Of a stretch of DNA of 64,000 nucleotides, positions 18,545-64,000 are shown in pieces. The stretch lies in the NCBI RefSeq assembly GCF_040938485.1, contig NW_027270920.1, positions 868,001-932,000 on the forward strand. The letters run 5' to 3'. The position numbers and the translations under genes are program-made. Numbering within the stretch: position 1 is the first letter of the stretch; each line of letters starts with the position of its first letter. The DNA is from Diadema antillarum (lineage: Eukaryota). The notes below the pieces were generated by a model. It saw only the letters and a list, made by a program, of their open reading frames with translations. It was not told where the DNA came from and made no database searches.

Positions 18545-18645
18545 CTGATTTAAGCATGAGGACAGGGAAGAACAAGAAAATGGGATTGAGAAAAACAATT
18601 TTTATATATTAAGCAAATGGCAGAGCTTTCAACTTTCTTTGTTAA

Positions 18646-19197
18646 AGGACAAGTCCACCTTCATATACATGTGAATTGAGTGAATGCAACAATATTAGTA
18701 GAACACATCAGTGAGAGTTTGAGGAAAATCTGACAATCTGTTCAAAAGTAATGAGTTTTTAAAGTATCTGTGCAATCACTGCTGGATGAGAAGACTACTA
18801 CGGTGTATGATGTCACATGCCTAGAACATTATAAGGAAAATAAAAAGAGAATTTCACAAAAGTTTACTTTTTGAATAAAGTCCTCATTTCTTCGACTTGT
18901 TACCGACGCACATTAAGGGTAATATTATTCCCCTTGCTTTCTGAAAGAGAGAAGTCGAGTGTTCTTTTGTTATGCGAGAAAAGTGAAAATAGGTTGAGTT
19001 TTCTTCATACTTTCTTTATATCGTTGTACACATGTGACATCACAAGCTATAGTAGTCTTCTCATCCAGCCGCGACTGAGCAGAAAAATCCATGACTTTAG
19101 AACGGATTGTCCAATTTTCCTCAAACTCTCACTGATGTGTTCTACTAATATTGCTGCATTCACTCAACCCGCATGTCTGTGAAGGTGAACTTGTCCC
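18646..19197. mobile_element. Kolobok-type (T2-like) MITE, 552 bp, TTAA target duplication
   Basis: TTAA (18642-18645) AGGACAAGT...ACTTGTCCC TTAA (19198-19201) with ~80-bp imperfect TIRs. Paralogous empty sites carry a single TTAA at 34098-34101 and 51681-51684. Confidence 0.85.
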
Positions 19198-19256
19198 TTA
19201 AGCAGTGGAGAGCACATACACACAATCAATTACCCATAAAAAAAATTTTCTGACTT

Positions 19257-60715: not shown

Positions 60716-63520
60716 ATGGCCGTAGCCATGGCAACCAAGCTGGATACTGCTACTTCAACCGTTACAGCAATTGTGTGCTTACTATTGTGTGTTCAGGCCA
60801 CCACGCCAACACCCTCTGGCCATTTCCATGTACAAAGTCAGCAGCGATGTAGATTCAAAGAAACCAGTGTGGGTGTCAAGGTATCCTGTACAAATCTCCA
60901 TCTGACGTCCATACCTCGGAATTTGCCAAACAACACCATCTCGCTTGACTTATCATTCAACAACATCACGCTGCAGCGGAATGATTCCTTTAGTGGCTTG
61001 CCAACGCTGGAAATTCTCAATTTGCAATGGAATAATATAGCAATTATTAGAAAAAAAATCTTCTGGCCTCTGGCAAGCTTAAGGACTCTCATCTTGAGTG
61101 AGAATGTTATAGAATATCTAGAACCTGGAATATTTCTCTACAACCCTCATCTAACAAAGGTACCATTGGCTTTAAACTGTCTCACAGAAATTCCCACTGC
61201 TGCTTTATCAGCCCTGTCTTCATTACCAGTGGTAAATTTAGCAAGCAATTCTGTGAGATCTCTAAGCTTTAATGGATTTGAAAAATGGAAACACATCTCC
61301 GAACTTTCCTTGAAATTAAACAATATAACTGAAATAAACCCCACTGATTTCCTTCCTCTGCAAAACACCACAGTAGGTATTCTTGATTTGAGGGCAAACC
61401 AAATAGAGAGCTTACCTTACCACGCATTCTTCTACTTGAAGAATGTCAATGCAATCAATCTTGGAGGGAATAACATCTTCTCTTTTGGCATCTGGCCTTT
61501 CCTGGGCATGAAAGAAATAAGTACCCTCTATGTTGAGGGTTCATTGATTCATGAGCTCCCCCCAATGAATACTTCTGCAAATCTCTCATTGCCATACCCA
61601 AACATTCCTAACCTTTCCCTACGGTATAATTTCTTACAATCTATCCCAAGTGGTGCCTTGTGGGGCTTTGACAAACTGAAGAGGCTTAACCTCCATGGAA
61701 ATAAGATTTCTGATATTACAAATGACTCTTTCTGTTGCCTACTATCTCTAGCAGACCTTGATATGTCCCAAAATGCATTGTCCTTCATTCCACATGGTGC
61801 ATTCTCTTGTTTGTCTACCCTCCAGCAGCTTAATGTGACAGGAAATGTTCTGAAGGTGGTTTCTCCACAGTCGTTTGCTGGCATGAACTCAATAAGGACT
61901 TTATTGCTTGCCAAAAATTTCATTGAGGAAGTATTAGGAGCAGCATGGACCATCCCTACCCTTCAAACACTTGATCTTTCACATAATCTCCTGGACACTC
62001 TCAAGAGCAGACGATTCACTGGTCTGTCAAACCTTCAAGTGCTAAATATCTCATTTAATCTTCTCACCATGTTCACTCTGCAGTCCGTTTATGGACTATC
62101 AAACCTGCAGAAGCTGTATGCCACAAATGAGAAACATTCATATTTGAATGGCATGCTTAAGGCTTTGCCAAAGCTGCAATACTTGGATGTGTCAAACAAC
62201 CCGATCTCCTGGATGTCCATTGATCAATTCACTCACAATGCTGTCCTTGAAGAGCTGCGAATGGAACGAGGACAGTTGCTGGGCAGAGACTTATTTGACA
62301 ACAGTCAAAACATGTCTATTTTCAGAGGCCTTGCTTCCCTGGGCAAGCTCCGTTTGAAAGGGAACTTTTTGCATCAATTAGATCTTCGAACATTCTCAAA
62401 CCTTTCCAATCTTTACTACCTGGATATGAGTGAGTCACGTATCACTGTTCTTGTCCCTCGAATATTCAAAGATTTACACTCTCTAAAGTTCCTGTATCTG
62501 AATGACAACAAGCTACTAGCACTTAATGGAGATGTGTTTCAGGGACTTGGAAGCTTAACAGTACTTCTTATCCAGAATAATTCACTCAGCAAAATTGAGA
62601 AACAGACTTTTGCACCTACTCCAGAGCTACGAGCACTGTATTTGCCTGGGAATCATATCAACACCATACTTCCTGGAACCTTCTTTCCGACCACAGATCA
62701 TTCTCTGTCTATTGACATCTCCAGGAATCCCATCTCCTGCACCTGTGAGCTACAGTGGTTCAGGAACTGGCTTCACACAGCCAACATCAGAATTGAACAT
62801 CCTGATCGGACACTGTGCTCCAGCGCCTCACTGCAGGTGCTCAAAAACAAGCCTCTACTGTCCTTTGATCCAGGTGACTTCTGTGGTGTGGACACCGCTC
62901 TCATCACTGGACTATCCCTGACAGGAGCGGCTGTCTTTCTTCTCACTGTCCTCGCTTACATCAATCGCTGGTGGCTGAACTACAAATTCTTTCTGCTGAA
63001 GCTAGCCTTGTTTGGCTACAAGGAGGTTGAGGAAGATGTGGCAGAGGAGGACTACCGCTACCAGCTCAACGTCATGTTCCACGACGATGATGAGGGGTTT
63101 GTGAATGACATCCTGAGACCAGCCTTGATGCAGAGGATGCCTCATCTGCAGCACATCATCTACGGGGACGATGACCTCAACGTAGGGATGTTCTATGTCG
63201 ACGCCCTCTATCATGCTATTGAGAGCAGCTACAAGTCAGTCCTTTTGATAAGCAATCAGTCTGTGGGTGATGTCTGGTTTATGACCAAGCTCCGTATGGC
63301 GCTGGAGCACTTGAATGAGACCAGACTGGACAAAATCATTCTTGTGTTTCTGGAGGACATTGAGGACGACAACCTGCCCTATCTTGTCAGGCTCTTTCTG
63401 AGTAGGAACAGGCCCTACATGTTGTGGACTGAGGATGAAGATGGACAGGAACTGTTCTGGGCCACTTTAGAGAAGAACATGAGGACTAACAGAGTTCTCA
63501 ACAATATCATTCCTGTTTGA
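60716..63520 (+). CDS. Toll-like receptor copy 6 (class B), intact, 934 aa, single-exon
   Basis: Uninterrupted ORF, nearly identical to copy 4 in the N-terminal part and to copy 2 in the TM/TIR part. Confidence 0.96.
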   Translation: MAVAMATKLDTATSTVTAIVCLLLCVQATTPTPSGHFHVQSQQRCRFKETSVGVKVSCTNLHLTSIPRNLPNNTISLDLSFNNITLQRNDSFSGLPTLEILNLQWNNIAIIRKKIFWPLASLRTLILSENVIEYLEPGIFLYNPHLTKVPLALNCLTEIPTAALSALSSLPVVNLASNSVRSLSFNGFEKWKHISELSLKLNNITEINPTDFLPLQNTTVGILDLRANQIESLPYHAFFYLKNVNAINLGGNNIFSFGIWPFLGMKEISTLYVEGSLIHELPPMNTSANLSLPYPNIPNLSLRYNFLQSIPSGALWGFDKLKRLNLHGNKISDITNDSFCCLLSLADLDMSQNALSFIPHGAFSCLSTLQQLNVTGNVLKVVSPQSFAGMNSIRTLLLAKNFIEEVLGAAWTIPTLQTLDLSHNLLDTLKSRRFTGLSNLQVLNISFNLLTMFTLQSVYGLSNLQKLYATNEKHSYLNGMLKALPKLQYLDVSNNPISWMSIDQFTHNAVLEELRMERGQLLGRDLFDNSQNMSIFRGLASLGKLRLKGNFLHQLDLRTFSNLSNLYYLDMSESRITVLVPRIFKDLHSLKFLYLNDNKLLALNGDVFQGLGSLTVLLIQNNSLSKIEKQTFAPTPELRALYLPGNHINTILPGTFFPTTDHSLSIDISRNPISCTCELQWFRNWLHTANIRIEHPDRTLCSSASLQVLKNKPLLSFDPGDFCGVDTALITGLSLTGAAVFLLTVLAYINRWWLNYKFFLLKLALFGYKEVEEDVAEEDYRYQLNVMFHDDDEGFVNDILRPALMQRMPHLQHIIYGDDDLNVGMFYVDALYHAIESSYKSVLLISNQSVGDVWFMTKLRMALEHLNETRLDKIILVFLEDIEDDNLPYLVRLFLSRNRPYMLWTEDEDGQELFWATLEKNMRTNRVLNNIIPV

Positions 63521-64000
63521 GTTCAAATGGTGTAAAGAAACAGCACATGTTGGGCCAACGTTTGTGGGTAACACGCTTGTAAGTTACAGTGGACTCCAGC
63601 AATAATGAAGTCCTGGGGACCTGCATCTTTCTTTCGTTATTATCTAAATTTTGTAATCATAACCCAACAAATACACAATAAAAATACATAGAGTGCATAA
63701 TGTTGGAGCTGAATTTTTTCTTCGTTGTAACCAGAATTGAATTATAATTGTGTTCATTATTACGGGAGTGCCTCGTATCAATCCAGCCGAATAACCTTCA
63801 GTTTTCCTTGATTTACGTCCTTGTTCAGACTTCAAATCCAAATCACCAATATTTGGTGATTATTTGTACCTACACGTGTATAGATGAGTGTGCTTATAAA
63901 CTAAAAACAGCTGGTAAAGAGGAAAATGGAAACTATGTTTGATTTTATTTCACTATCTGAAAAAGAGACTGTAGACTTTGTCATAATATAATTGCATGTT

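What the first reader, a model, noticed from the sequence alone, without database searches (positions are those of the whole stretch)
18545..64000. A six-gene TLR array appears nested antisense inside a single giant PPWD1 intron
Seen: the most upstream visible PPWD1 exon (18544-18462, - strand) begins mid-protein, just before the cyclophilin domain, behind a full polypyrimidine tract and CAG acceptor. I found no WD40 or linker exon (such as the expected ...DVFNEKP... segment) in the remaining 45 kb, which is filled with triplicated TLR units on the opposite strand. Established: PPWD1 is a conserved spliceosomal WD40-cyclophilin whose N-terminal ~490 aa must be encoded upstream. Inference: a fast-evolving immune receptor cluster is expanding inside an intron of a housekeeping splicing factor, so every PPWD1 pre-mRNA would traverse all the TLRs antisense. 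This could couple chromatin openness, transcriptional interference or antisense regulation to the receptor repertoire.
Basis: partly seen in the sequence, partly recalled or inferred. Interest (0 to 1): 0.85.

Follow-up and report, generated by a model that had tools for sequence, protein, structure and literature searches.

The report
TLR gene array inside PPWD1 intron
[quoted passage not shown] It is a real, tidy example of an already known arrangement (nested genes).

Summary

**Source and host gene.** The window is Diadema antillarum (GCA_040938485.1, contig JBFRCO010000032.1). It holds exons 13-16 of PPWD1, the cyclophilin domain, on the minus strand. No other PPWD1 exon lies in the window.

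**The intron.** Exons 1-12 lie on the same gapless contig, in order and in the same orientation. Exon 12 (...DVFNEKPSKEEQMAATQ) is 12.9 kb past the window's end. Intron 12 is 58,354 bp and holds all six TLR units antisense: four have intact ORFs and two are disrupted.

**Comparison.**
- An independent chromosome-level D. setosum assembly has the same intron at 44,389 bp with five antisense TLRs.
- The intron is about 0.4-0.65 kb and TLR-free in Lytechinus, Strongylocentrotus, Asterias and Apostichopus.
- Both halves of PPWD1 are under purifying selection between the two Diadema species. Exons 13-16 show 9 synonymous and 0 non-synonymous differences.

**Growth.** The array grew in place by tandem duplication of a two-gene unit. 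One breakpoint lies 5 nt from the 3' splice site.

**Limits.** No RNA data could be reached, so splicing across the intron and any regulatory coupling remain inferred.

**Verdict.** Gene-family clusters nested in a host intron are already known (TipE, GMC oxidoreductases). This is a new member of a known kind, of moderate interest. Other unverified notes of this scan report similar nested TLR arrays elsewhere in this genome.

The parts
18462..18544 (-). PPWD1 exon 13 (83 nt, aa 458-485, phase 0 start): first exon after the giant intron
   Evidence: The exact rebuild of P0187 from L001 places it at L001 90053-90135, with acceptor TCATGCTTAAATCAG and donor GTGAGT. Window coordinate = 108597 - L001 coordinate.
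17245..17357 (-). PPWD1 exon 14 (cyclophilin domain)
15732..15883 (-). PPWD1 exon 15 (cyclophilin domain)
14312..14455 (-). PPWD1 exon 16, last coding exon including the stop codon
18545..64000 (-). The 3' 45.5 kb of PPWD1 intron 12. The whole intron is 58,354 bp (L001 31699-90052) and runs 12.9 kb past the window end to exon 12.
18549..18645 (-). Acceptor-proximal 97 nt of intron 12 (pyrimidine tract). It forms the proximal end of the duplicated unit, 5 nt from the 3' splice site.
   Evidence: Self-BLAST, alignment, BLAST of the acceptor region against L001 and L003
34005..34101 (-). Internal copy of the acceptor-proximal segment (88.8% identical). It keeps the pyrimidine tract and ends ...CTTAAAG|TATGG instead of ...CTTAAATCAG|GGG.
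51586..51684 (-). Second internal copy of the acceptor-proximal segment (88.0% identical)
18642..19201 (.). Inverted-repeat element of the MITE kind, absent from the two internal copies of the unit, and very high-copy in the genome
   Evidence: Inverted self-match 18642-18851 / 19201-18999. Word depth is 10^5-10^6 here against about 20-30 for unique DNA.
20739..23535 (+). TLR a, pseudogene with five frameshifting indels relative to TLR c
28122..30926 (+). TLR b, apparently disrupted. A 1-nt deletion after 28554 and a 1-nt insertion after 28721 put 167 nt out of frame, giving 7 stops.
35554..38343 (+). TLR c, intact ORF (929 aa from the first ATG); LRR + TIR
42993..45797 (+). TLR d, intact ORF (934 aa), 99.3% nt identity to TLR f
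53143..55932 (+). TLR e, intact ORF (929 aa). It is identical to the product annotated on the public record and 98.2% nt identical to D. setosum Ds_2.
60716..63520 (+). TLR f, intact ORF (934 aa): signal-peptide-like N-terminus, LRRs, transmembrane stretch near residue 729, TIR at 790-888

Best explanation
**What it is.** The window is part of the PPWD1 locus of Diadema antillarum. PPWD1 is a 16-exon gene spanning 84.3 kb. Its twelfth intron lies between the linker exon (...DVFNEKPSKEEQMAATQ) and the first cyclophilin exon. That intron is about 0.4-0.65 kb in other echinoderms and 58,354 bp here, and it holds a tandem array of six intronless TLR units on the opposite strand. Four units are intact and two are disrupted.

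**How it arose.** The array was already in this intron in the common ancestor of D. antillarum and D. setosum. It then grew in place by tandem duplication of a two-TLR unit of about 15-17.5 kb. The proximal breakpoint of that unit is at a TTAA 5 nt upstream of the 3' splice site, so the duplications copied the pyrimidine tract but spared the AG and exon 13. Copy number has since changed independently in each species.

**How it most likely works (inferred, not shown).** RNA polymerase II transcribes PPWD1 through the whole array, and exon 12 is spliced to exon 13 across 58 kb. The TLRs are separate transcription units. I read the nesting as a tolerated by-product of where the array landed and grew, not as a regulatory device.
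For: **Identity of the locus.**
- Window 4312-64000 is 100% identical to L001 (GCA_040938485.1, JBFRCO010000032.1).
- The annotated 620-aa PPWD1 product (P0187 = XP_071507877.1) can be rebuilt exactly from 16 exons on that contig, with GT-AG at all 15 introns. Intron 12 is 58,354 bp; the other introns are 0.5-7.4 kb.
- All six TLR units lie between exons 12 and 13 on the opposite strand.

**Independent assembly.** D. setosum (OZ188198.1, L003) has the same 16-exon gene, a 44,389-bp intron 12 and five antisense TLR ORFs. There are no N runs in either locus.

**Derived state.** Intron 12 is about 578 bp in Lytechinus, 541 bp in S. purpuratus, 650 bp in Asterias and 411 bp in Apostichopus. No nested gene is called inside PPWD1 in Lytechinus, S. 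purpuratus or Asterias, and tblastn with a TLR found nothing in the two camarodont loci. The RNF220-PPWD1-SAS-6 neighbourhood is conserved.

**Both halves still constrained.** Between the two Diadema species, exons 1-12 differ at 30 synonymous sites and 4 non-synonymous codons. Exons 13-16 differ at 9 synonymous sites and 0 non-synonymous codons. The acceptor region is 98.3% identical over 241 nt.

**Growth in place.**
- The window holds three tandem units.
- The 97 nt next to the acceptor recur twice inside the D. antillarum intron and once inside the D. setosum intron.
- The TLR tree shows cross-species orthologue pairs: Da_e/Ds_2 at 98.2%, and Da_d/f/b with Ds_3 at 98-99%.
- It also shows species-specific copies: Da b/d/f at 98.5-99.3% to each other, and Ds_4 = Ds_5 at 100%.

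**The junction is real DNA.** DNA contigs from three other public runs bridge 18310-18663, which covers exon 13, the acceptor and the duplication boundary.
Against: **No transcript evidence was reachable.**
- The three runs that hold the stretch are DNA, with introns covered as evenly as exons.
- No RNA-Seq run was listed.
- No Diadema transcript-derived PPWD1 fragment is in the protein collection.
- So the exon 12-13 junction rests on the NCBI model, the splice signals, the reading-frame continuity and the selection test. The genome paper says NCBI's pipeline used 12 RNA-Seq runs, but it gives no per-intron support (PMC13511894).

**Assembly caveat.** GCA_040938485.1 retains both haplotypes for most loci (84% duplicated BUSCOs, PMC13511894).
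- An allelic copy of this locus may exist on another contig. I could not fetch or compare one.
- I could not check read depth over the third unit (95-96% identical to the second), so a falsely duplicated unit is not strictly excluded.

**No data bear on 'tolerated by-product' versus 'regulatory coupling'.**
Confidence: 0.85

Rival explanations
1. The nesting is functionally coupled. Continuous antisense transcription from the constitutively expressed host keeps the array's chromatin open, or interferes with TLR expression. Alternatively, TLR transcription and the copied pyrimidine tracts disturb PPWD1 processing. Either way, host and nested genes would regulate each other.
For: - The geometry required for it is real.
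- Nested genes can cause intron retention, exonization and cryptic polyadenylation in host genes (abstract and title of PMC3192792).
- Two copies of the intron's own pyrimidine tract followed by an AG lie in PPWD1 sense inside the intron.
- Other unverified notes of this scan report TLR arrays inside giant introns of other genes in this genome.
Against: - No expression data were reachable.
- In the documented insect cases, the nested clusters are expressed independently of their host. Host and nested genes generally show inverse or no correlation (PMC3240667).
- Poly(A) hexamers show no consistent depletion on the PPWD1-sense strand: AATAAA is 42 sense vs 41 antisense in D. antillarum and 19 vs 42 in D. 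setosum.
- About 46% of this assembly is annotated gene span (33,123 genes with a mean span of 24.3 kb in 1.75 Gb, figures from PMC13511894; the product is my arithmetic). An array landing in an intron needs no special explanation.
Confidence: 0.12
2. The cyclophilin exons are no longer part of one PPWD1 transcript. The possibilities are a gene split into a WD40 gene and a cyclophilin gene, an orphaned 3' fragment, or a misjoined assembly.
For: There is no direct RNA evidence for the exon 12-13 junction. The public gene model could have been built largely from protein homology.
Against: - All 16 exons are collinear on one gapless contig with canonical splice sites and an unbroken reading frame.
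- The same structure is in an independent chromosome-level assembly of D. setosum.
- Exon 13 begins mid-domain at a conserved phase-0 acceptor. That acceptor region is 98.3% identical between the species.
- Exons 13-16 show 9 synonymous and 0 non-synonymous differences.
- Only one Diadema PPWD1 cluster was found, with one contig per species.
- DNA contigs from other runs bridge the exon 13 / intron junction.
Confidence: 0.04
3. The nesting is real, but the third unit (window 51586-64000 and beyond) is an assembly artefact: two haplotypes laid in tandem in an uncollapsed assembly. The true D. antillarum array would then have four TLRs in two units.
For: - The assembly is known to retain both haplotypes (PMC13511894).
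- Units 2 and 3 are 95-96% identical, a level that divergent alleles could reach in an immune locus.
- D. setosum has only one internal copy of the acceptor-proximal segment.
- Two other notes of this scan describe 'four-gene' TLR arrays in a giant intron of a WD40 gene on other pieces of this genome. These could be the allelic contig; I did not test this.
Against: - The contig is a gapless HiFi contig of 1.9 Mb, and the units lie well inside it.
- Mean heterozygosity is 2.5% (PMC13511894), lower than the 4-5% divergence between the units.
- The junction between units 2 and 3 is a copy of the junction between units 1 and 2 (32075-38462 vs 49653-56050), as expected of a true second duplication.
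Confidence: 0.1

Closest known systems
[quoted passage not shown]
   Same: Several paralogues of one family lie together inside a single intron of an unrelated, widely conserved host gene. The host's span is inflated (20-100 kb for CG18675). The nesting arose in one lineage and is absent from the outgroup.
   Different: - Those clusters are old and stable across insects, with fixed membership. This one is restricted, as far as sampled, to Diadema, and its copy number differs between two congeners.
- The TipE cluster has genes on both strands. Here all six TLRs are antisense to the host.
- The nested family here is an innate immune receptor family.
LRRTM genes nested in alpha-catenin (CTNNA) introns of vertebrates (PMC3933685)
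   Same: LRR-containing transmembrane protein genes nested in an intron of an unrelated host gene.
   Different: There it is one LRRTM gene per host, and I read only the abstract. Here a tandem array is duplicating in place. The strand arrangement of the LRRTM genes was not checked.
Tandem arrays of intronless sccTLR genes in sea urchins (Buckley and Rast 2012, PMC3367398)
   Same: - Intronless ORFs with a signal-peptide-like N-terminus, LRRs, a transmembrane stretch and a TIR domain.
- Tandem genomic arrays.
- About a quarter of copies are pseudogenes: 26% in S. purpuratus, and 2 of 6 here.
- Very similar paralogues.
   Different: That paper contains no occurrence of 'nested'. Assignment of these Diadema TLRs to a named S. 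purpuratus subfamily was not attempted.
NF1 intron 27b with EVI2A, EVI2B and OMG on the opposite strand (from my own knowledge, not checked here)
   Same: Several genes nested antisense in one intron of a large host gene.
   Different: The three nested genes are not all paralogues and do not form an expanding tandem array.

Membership tests
Nested (intronic) gene arrangement: host gene with genes inside one intron | The nested genes lie wholly between two consecutive exons of the host gene, on one contiguous piece of DNA | tested here: met
   Exon 12 is at L001 31632-31698 and exon 13 at 90053-90135. The six TLR units lie at L001 45080-87858. The contig has no N runs. The same holds in D. setosum.
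Nested (intronic) gene arrangement: host gene with genes inside one intron | The two flanking host exons are joined in the mature host mRNA | not testable with these tools
   No RNA run or transcript fragment could be reached. Indirect support comes from the NCBI model XP_071507877.1, the GT-AG sites and frame continuity, and the 9 synonymous / 0 non-synonymous differences in exons 13-16.
Nested (intronic) gene arrangement: host gene with genes inside one intron | The nested genes are transcription units of their own | tested here: inconclusive
   Four complete ORFs have their own start and stop on the opposite strand. The public record calls them as separate genes. Expression was not tested.
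PPWD1 (WD40 + cyclophilin spliceosomal protein) orthologue | N-terminal WD40 beta-propeller followed by a C-terminal cyclophilin-type PPIase domain in one protein | tested here: met
   P0187 carries WD40-family Pfam hits and PF00160. It is 87% identical to Lytechinus PPWD1 and 66-75% identical to PPWD1 of other echinoderms, vertebrates and other animals.
PPWD1 (WD40 + cyclophilin spliceosomal protein) orthologue | Orthologous position in the genome (conserved neighbours) | tested here: met
   RNF220 lies upstream and SAS-6 downstream in D. setosum, Lytechinus and S. purpuratus. The D. antillarum flanks align collinearly with those of D. setosum.
PPWD1 (WD40 + cyclophilin spliceosomal protein) orthologue | Presence in the spliceosome / PPIase activity | not testable with these tools
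   Taken from general knowledge of human PPWD1. Nothing here tests it.
Sea urchin single-cysteine-cluster TLR (sccTLR) | LRR ectodomain, one transmembrane helix, cytoplasmic TIR domain | tested here: met
   Pfam finds LRR_8 in 9 stretches (E 2e-80 and 4e-83) and TIR at residues 785-883 (c) and 790-888 (f), above the gathering score. The hydrophobic 21-mer maximum is at residue 729.
Sea urchin single-cysteine-cluster TLR (sccTLR) | Coding sequence in a single exon | tested here: met
   Uninterrupted ORFs of 931-937 codons for c, d, e and f, and for all five D. setosum copies.
Sea urchin single-cysteine-cluster TLR (sccTLR) | Membership of a named subfamily (I-XI) by TIR phylogeny with S. purpuratus genes | not tested
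   No S. purpuratus TLR sequences were fetched.

The most novel reading that the evidence does not exclude
TLR arrays in Diadema are not in introns by chance. They would preferentially settle and expand inside long introns of steadily transcribed genes: PPWD1 here, and WD40/EF-hand and WDR49-like genes according to other unverified notes of this scan. Host read-through transcription would then shape their chromatin, their expression, or their rate of unequal crossing-over and gene conversion. The copied pyrimidine-tract/AG segments inside the intron would give rise to truncated, cyclophilin-less PPWD1 isoforms.
Probability: 0.1. Interest if true: 0.65.

Novelty: new member of a known kind. Interest (0 to 1): 0.35.

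Why it matters
The locus is a clean, datable case of how a fast-turnover immune receptor family reshapes a housekeeping gene.

- A conserved intron of about 0.5 kb grew roughly 100-fold, yet both halves of the host gene stayed under purifying selection.
- One duplication breakpoint sits 5 nt from the splice acceptor. This shows how close to an essential signal such rearrangements can come and still be tolerated.
- For Diadema, a keystone reef grazer struck by mass die-offs, the array differs in copy number between species and perhaps between haplotypes. It is therefore a concrete marker for immune-gene variation.
- For annotation, it warns that the 3' end of PPWD1 looks like an orphan fragment in any window shorter than the intron.
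- It also shows that intact TLR ORFs in this array are split or shortened in the public gene calls.

It does not open a new mechanism. Nested gene clusters are known, and the proposed regulatory coupling remains untested.

Tried and rejected
1. **RNA evidence.**
   - The look-up of sequencing runs on 14300-18600 gave three runs. Read laying showed them to be genomic DNA, with even depth over introns and no exon-exon joints.
   - A second search restricted to RNA-Seq libraries on the last exon and 3' flank listed none.
   - A search for short transcript-derived protein fragments spanning residues 400-520 found nothing closer than 69-71% identity, so none from Diadema.
2. **First attempt to extend past the window end.** An exact look-up of the TLR f product found nothing on record. 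The route through the PPWD1 protein worked instead.
3. **Search for the other haplotype of the locus.** The exact PPWD1 and TLR e products are on this one contig only, and no other note of the scan names PPWD1. This says nothing about an allelic contig with slightly different products.
4. **Strand bias of poly(A) hexamers in the intron,** as a sign of selection against premature termination of PPWD1. No consistent bias was found.
5. **Hidden micro-exons in 18545-64000.** tblastn with word size 2 and E up to 10 gave only chance-level hits. Exons shorter than about 10 codons would still escape, but the 16 exons found already account for every residue of the protein.
6. **Rejected: orphan fragment or misjoin.** See the rival explanations.

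
Full report
**1. What the window holds**

On the minus strand there are four exons that together encode a cyclophilin domain. They lie at 18544-18462, 17357-17245, 15883-15732 and 14455-14312, the last including the stop. The first reads [28 protein letters not shown].

On the plus strand, from 20.7 to 63.5 kb, lie six TLR units. Pfam finds nine LRR_8 stretches and a TIR domain in the two ORFs scanned, c and f. 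A hydrophobic stretch lies near residue 729 of f.

Self-comparison shows three tandem units of about 15-17.5 kb, each with two TLRs. Four ORFs (c, d, e, f) are intact. Unit a has five frameshifting indels. Unit b has a -1/+1 indel pair that puts 167 nt out of frame.

**2. No hidden PPWD1 exon**

A scan of 1.84 billion representative proteins with the last exon gave several long PPWD1 relatives. tblastn of ten of them against the window, at permissive settings, hit only the four cyclophilin exons.

**3. Where the window comes from, and where the missing exons are**

A second protein search returned a Diadema antillarum protein, P0187 (620 aa, XP_071507877.1). Its C-terminus equals the window's exons.

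Its gene is on record on contig JBFRCO010000032.1 of GCA_040938485.1. It spans 84,285 bp and has TLR genes called on the opposite strand inside it. Window 4312-64000 is 100% identical to the fetched locus L001, and the conversion is L001 coordinate = 108597 - window coordinate.

I rebuilt the coding sequence from L001. Sixteen exons with GT-AG at every intron give P0187 exactly.
- Exon 12 (L001 31632-31698, ...DVFNEKPSKEEQMAATQ) corresponds to window-equivalent 76966-76900, which is 12.9 kb past the window end.
- Intron 12 is 58,354 bp. All other introns are 0.5-7.4 kb.
- All six TLR units lie inside intron 12, antisense to PPWD1.
- The 11 kb of the intron beyond the array holds a retroelement in PPWD1 sense, with a reverse transcriptase and a tyrosine-recombinase-type domain.

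**4. Is it an assembly or annotation artefact?**

Three findings argue against an artefact.
- The chromosome-level assembly of D. setosum (OZ188198.1, L003) has the same 16-exon gene. Its intron 12 is 44,389 bp with five intact antisense TLR ORFs.
- The region from 1.8 kb upstream of exon 13 through exon 14 is collinear between the two species at 94% identity.
- DNA contigs from three other public runs bridge 18310-18663, which covers exon 13, the acceptor and the duplication boundary.

Two caveats remain.
- The genome paper states that this assembly retains both haplotypes for most loci (PMC13511894). An allelic contig may therefore exist, and I could not verify the third unit by read depth.
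- No RNA could be reached. The paper says NCBI's pipeline used 12 RNA-Seq runs, but per-intron support is not visible to me.

**5. Indirect test that PPWD1 still works as one gene**

Between D. antillarum and D. setosum, exons 1-12 differ at 30 synonymous sites and 4 non-synonymous codons. Exons 13-16 differ at 9 synonymous sites and none non-synonymous.

The array was already in the intron before the two species split (section 7), so both halves have stayed under purifying selection with the array in place. The acceptor region is 98.3% identical over 241 nt. Only one Diadema PPWD1 cluster exists in the protein collection, with one contig per species.

**6. The state is derived**

| Species | Intron 12 |
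|---|---|
| D. antillarum | 58,354 bp |
| D. setosum | 44,389 bp |
| Lytechinus | about 578 bp |
| S. purpuratus | about 541 bp |
| Asterias | about 650 bp |
| Apostichopus | about 411 bp |

No nested gene is called inside PPWD1 in Lytechinus, S. purpuratus or Asterias. tblastn with a TLR found no match in the two camarodont loci. The neighbours RNF220 and SAS-6 are conserved. The intron has therefore grown about 100-fold in the Diadema lineage.

**7. How the array grew**

The 97 nt immediately upstream of the acceptor (18549-18645) recur at 34005-34101 and 51586-51684. They also recur once inside the D. setosum intron. This places the first duplication inside the intron, before the species split, with a breakpoint at a TTAA 5 nt from the AG. 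It confirms part of another first-reader note (s1-208732).

The copies keep the pyrimidine tract but end ...CTTAAAG|TATGG. That is a weaker possible acceptor, followed three codons later by a stop in the exon 12 reading frame. Whether it is ever used is unknown.

The junction between units 2 and 3 is a copy of the junction between units 1 and 2, so a second duplication followed.

The TLR tree shows two kinds of relationship.
- Orthologue pairs across species: Da_e/Ds_2 at 98.2%, and Da_b/d/f with Ds_3 at 98-99%.
- Species-specific copies: Da_b/d/f at 98.5-99.3% to each other, and Ds_4 = Ds_5 at 100%.

'Expanding inside the intron' is therefore a fair description.

**8. What it means**

The structure is real. 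The mechanism that follows from it is that PPWD1 pre-mRNA traverses six antisense TLR units and removes them as one 58-kb intron. This is an inference from the gene model.

Poly(A) hexamers show no consistent strand bias.

By the paper's figures, about 46% of this assembly is annotated gene span (33,123 genes with a mean span of 24.3 kb in 1.75 Gb; the product is my arithmetic). An array landing in an intron is therefore not surprising in itself.

Other notes of this scan report TLR arrays inside giant introns of other genes of this genome (s1-224585, s1-215078, s1-211255, s1-208735). I did not test them. They are leads for a genome-wide count, and some may be the other haplotype of this very locus.

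**9. Comparison with what is known**

Clusters of paralogues nested in one host intron are documented.
- The TipE/Teh cluster lies in the last intron of CG18675.
- The GMC oxidoreductase cluster lies in a flotillin-2 intron.
- In the TipE case, expression is independent of the host (PMC3240667).
- LRRTM genes are nested in alpha-catenin genes (PMC3933685).

Sea urchin TLRs are known to be mostly intronless and, for at least the largest subfamily (Ic), clustered in large tandem arrays. About a quarter are pseudogenes (PMC3367398). That paper contains no occurrence of 'nested', and the Diadema genome paper contains none of 'nested' or 'intron'.

The case is thus a new member of a known kind. It is visible in the public annotation but, as far as I could search, not described.

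**10. Verdict**

- Observation: confirmed.
- Interpretation: partly supported. The structure holds, and the functional coupling is untested.
- Interest: moderate (0.35).

Noticed in passing
L001:32623-37018 (+), inside PPWD1 intron 12, about 7.6 kb beyond the window's 64000 end: Four consecutive ORFs in PPWD1 sense (448, 310, 341 and 220 aa). One has a reverse transcriptase domain (RVT_1, E 1e-21). Another has a phage-integrase N-terminal SAM-like domain (E 5e-6). This looks like a DIRS-type, tyrosine-recombinase retroelement. The public record calls it as one 471-aa gene.
   Followed up: partly
window 34005-34101 and 51586-51684 (minus strand); L003:47748-47844: Copies of the last 97 nt of intron 12 lie inside the intron in PPWD1 sense. 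The two D. antillarum copies end in TTAAAG|TATGG. Splicing exon 12 to them would read Y-G-E-stop. They could act as decoy 3' splice sites. No RNA was available to check.
   Followed up: partly
window 18642-19201: An inverted-repeat element about 560 bp long sits between the acceptor-proximal segment and the rest of unit 1. It is absent from the two internal copies of the unit. Its word depth in three DNA runs is 10^5-10^6, against about 20-30 for unique DNA, so it belongs to a very abundant MITE-like family. High-depth repeats also lie at 16600-17200 and 18000-18400.
   Followed up: partly
L001:45077-47869, 62800-65592, 70254-72770 (window TLRs f, d, c): The gene calls on record split three TLR ORFs of 931-937 codons that are intact into two genes each. 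In D. setosum they give 545-585-aa products for the five TLRs, all of which have intact 931- or 934-codon ORFs. TLR counts taken from these annotations will be off.
   Followed up: partly
L003:63587-66379 and L003:67947-70739 (D. setosum): Two TLR copies 4.4 kb apart are 100% identical over 2,793 nt. This is either a very recent duplication or gene conversion, or an assembly duplication.
   Followed up: no
window 16719-16947: A direct tandem repeat of a 112-nt match spaced 117 bp apart (99% identical) lies in PPWD1 intron 14. A related inverted copy of part of it is at 17083-17125.
   Followed up: no
window 14467-15566 (PPWD1 intron 15): One 1,190-letter DNA contig of run X3 covers 14226-14467 and 15566-15987, with only 520 letters between them where the window has 1,099. 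This may be an insertion/deletion polymorphism of about 580 bp.
   Followed up: no
window about 4312-9501 (plus strand) = L001:99096-104285: The gene downstream of PPWD1, convergent with it, is the SAS-6 orthologue by synteny. The product called at the same position in D. setosum, Lytechinus and S. purpuratus carries the SAS-6_N domain, and the flanks align collinearly with those of D. setosum.
   Followed up: partly
L001 vs L003, whole loci: Cross-species identity is 96-98% over 4.6-6.3-kb blocks inside the TLR array. It is only 84-90% in PPWD1 introns 1-11, and 90-96% 3' of exon 13 (introns 13-15 and the downstream flank). I cannot explain why the array is more similar between species than the 5' introns. 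Conversion, constraint and uneven polymorphism are all possible.
   Followed up: no
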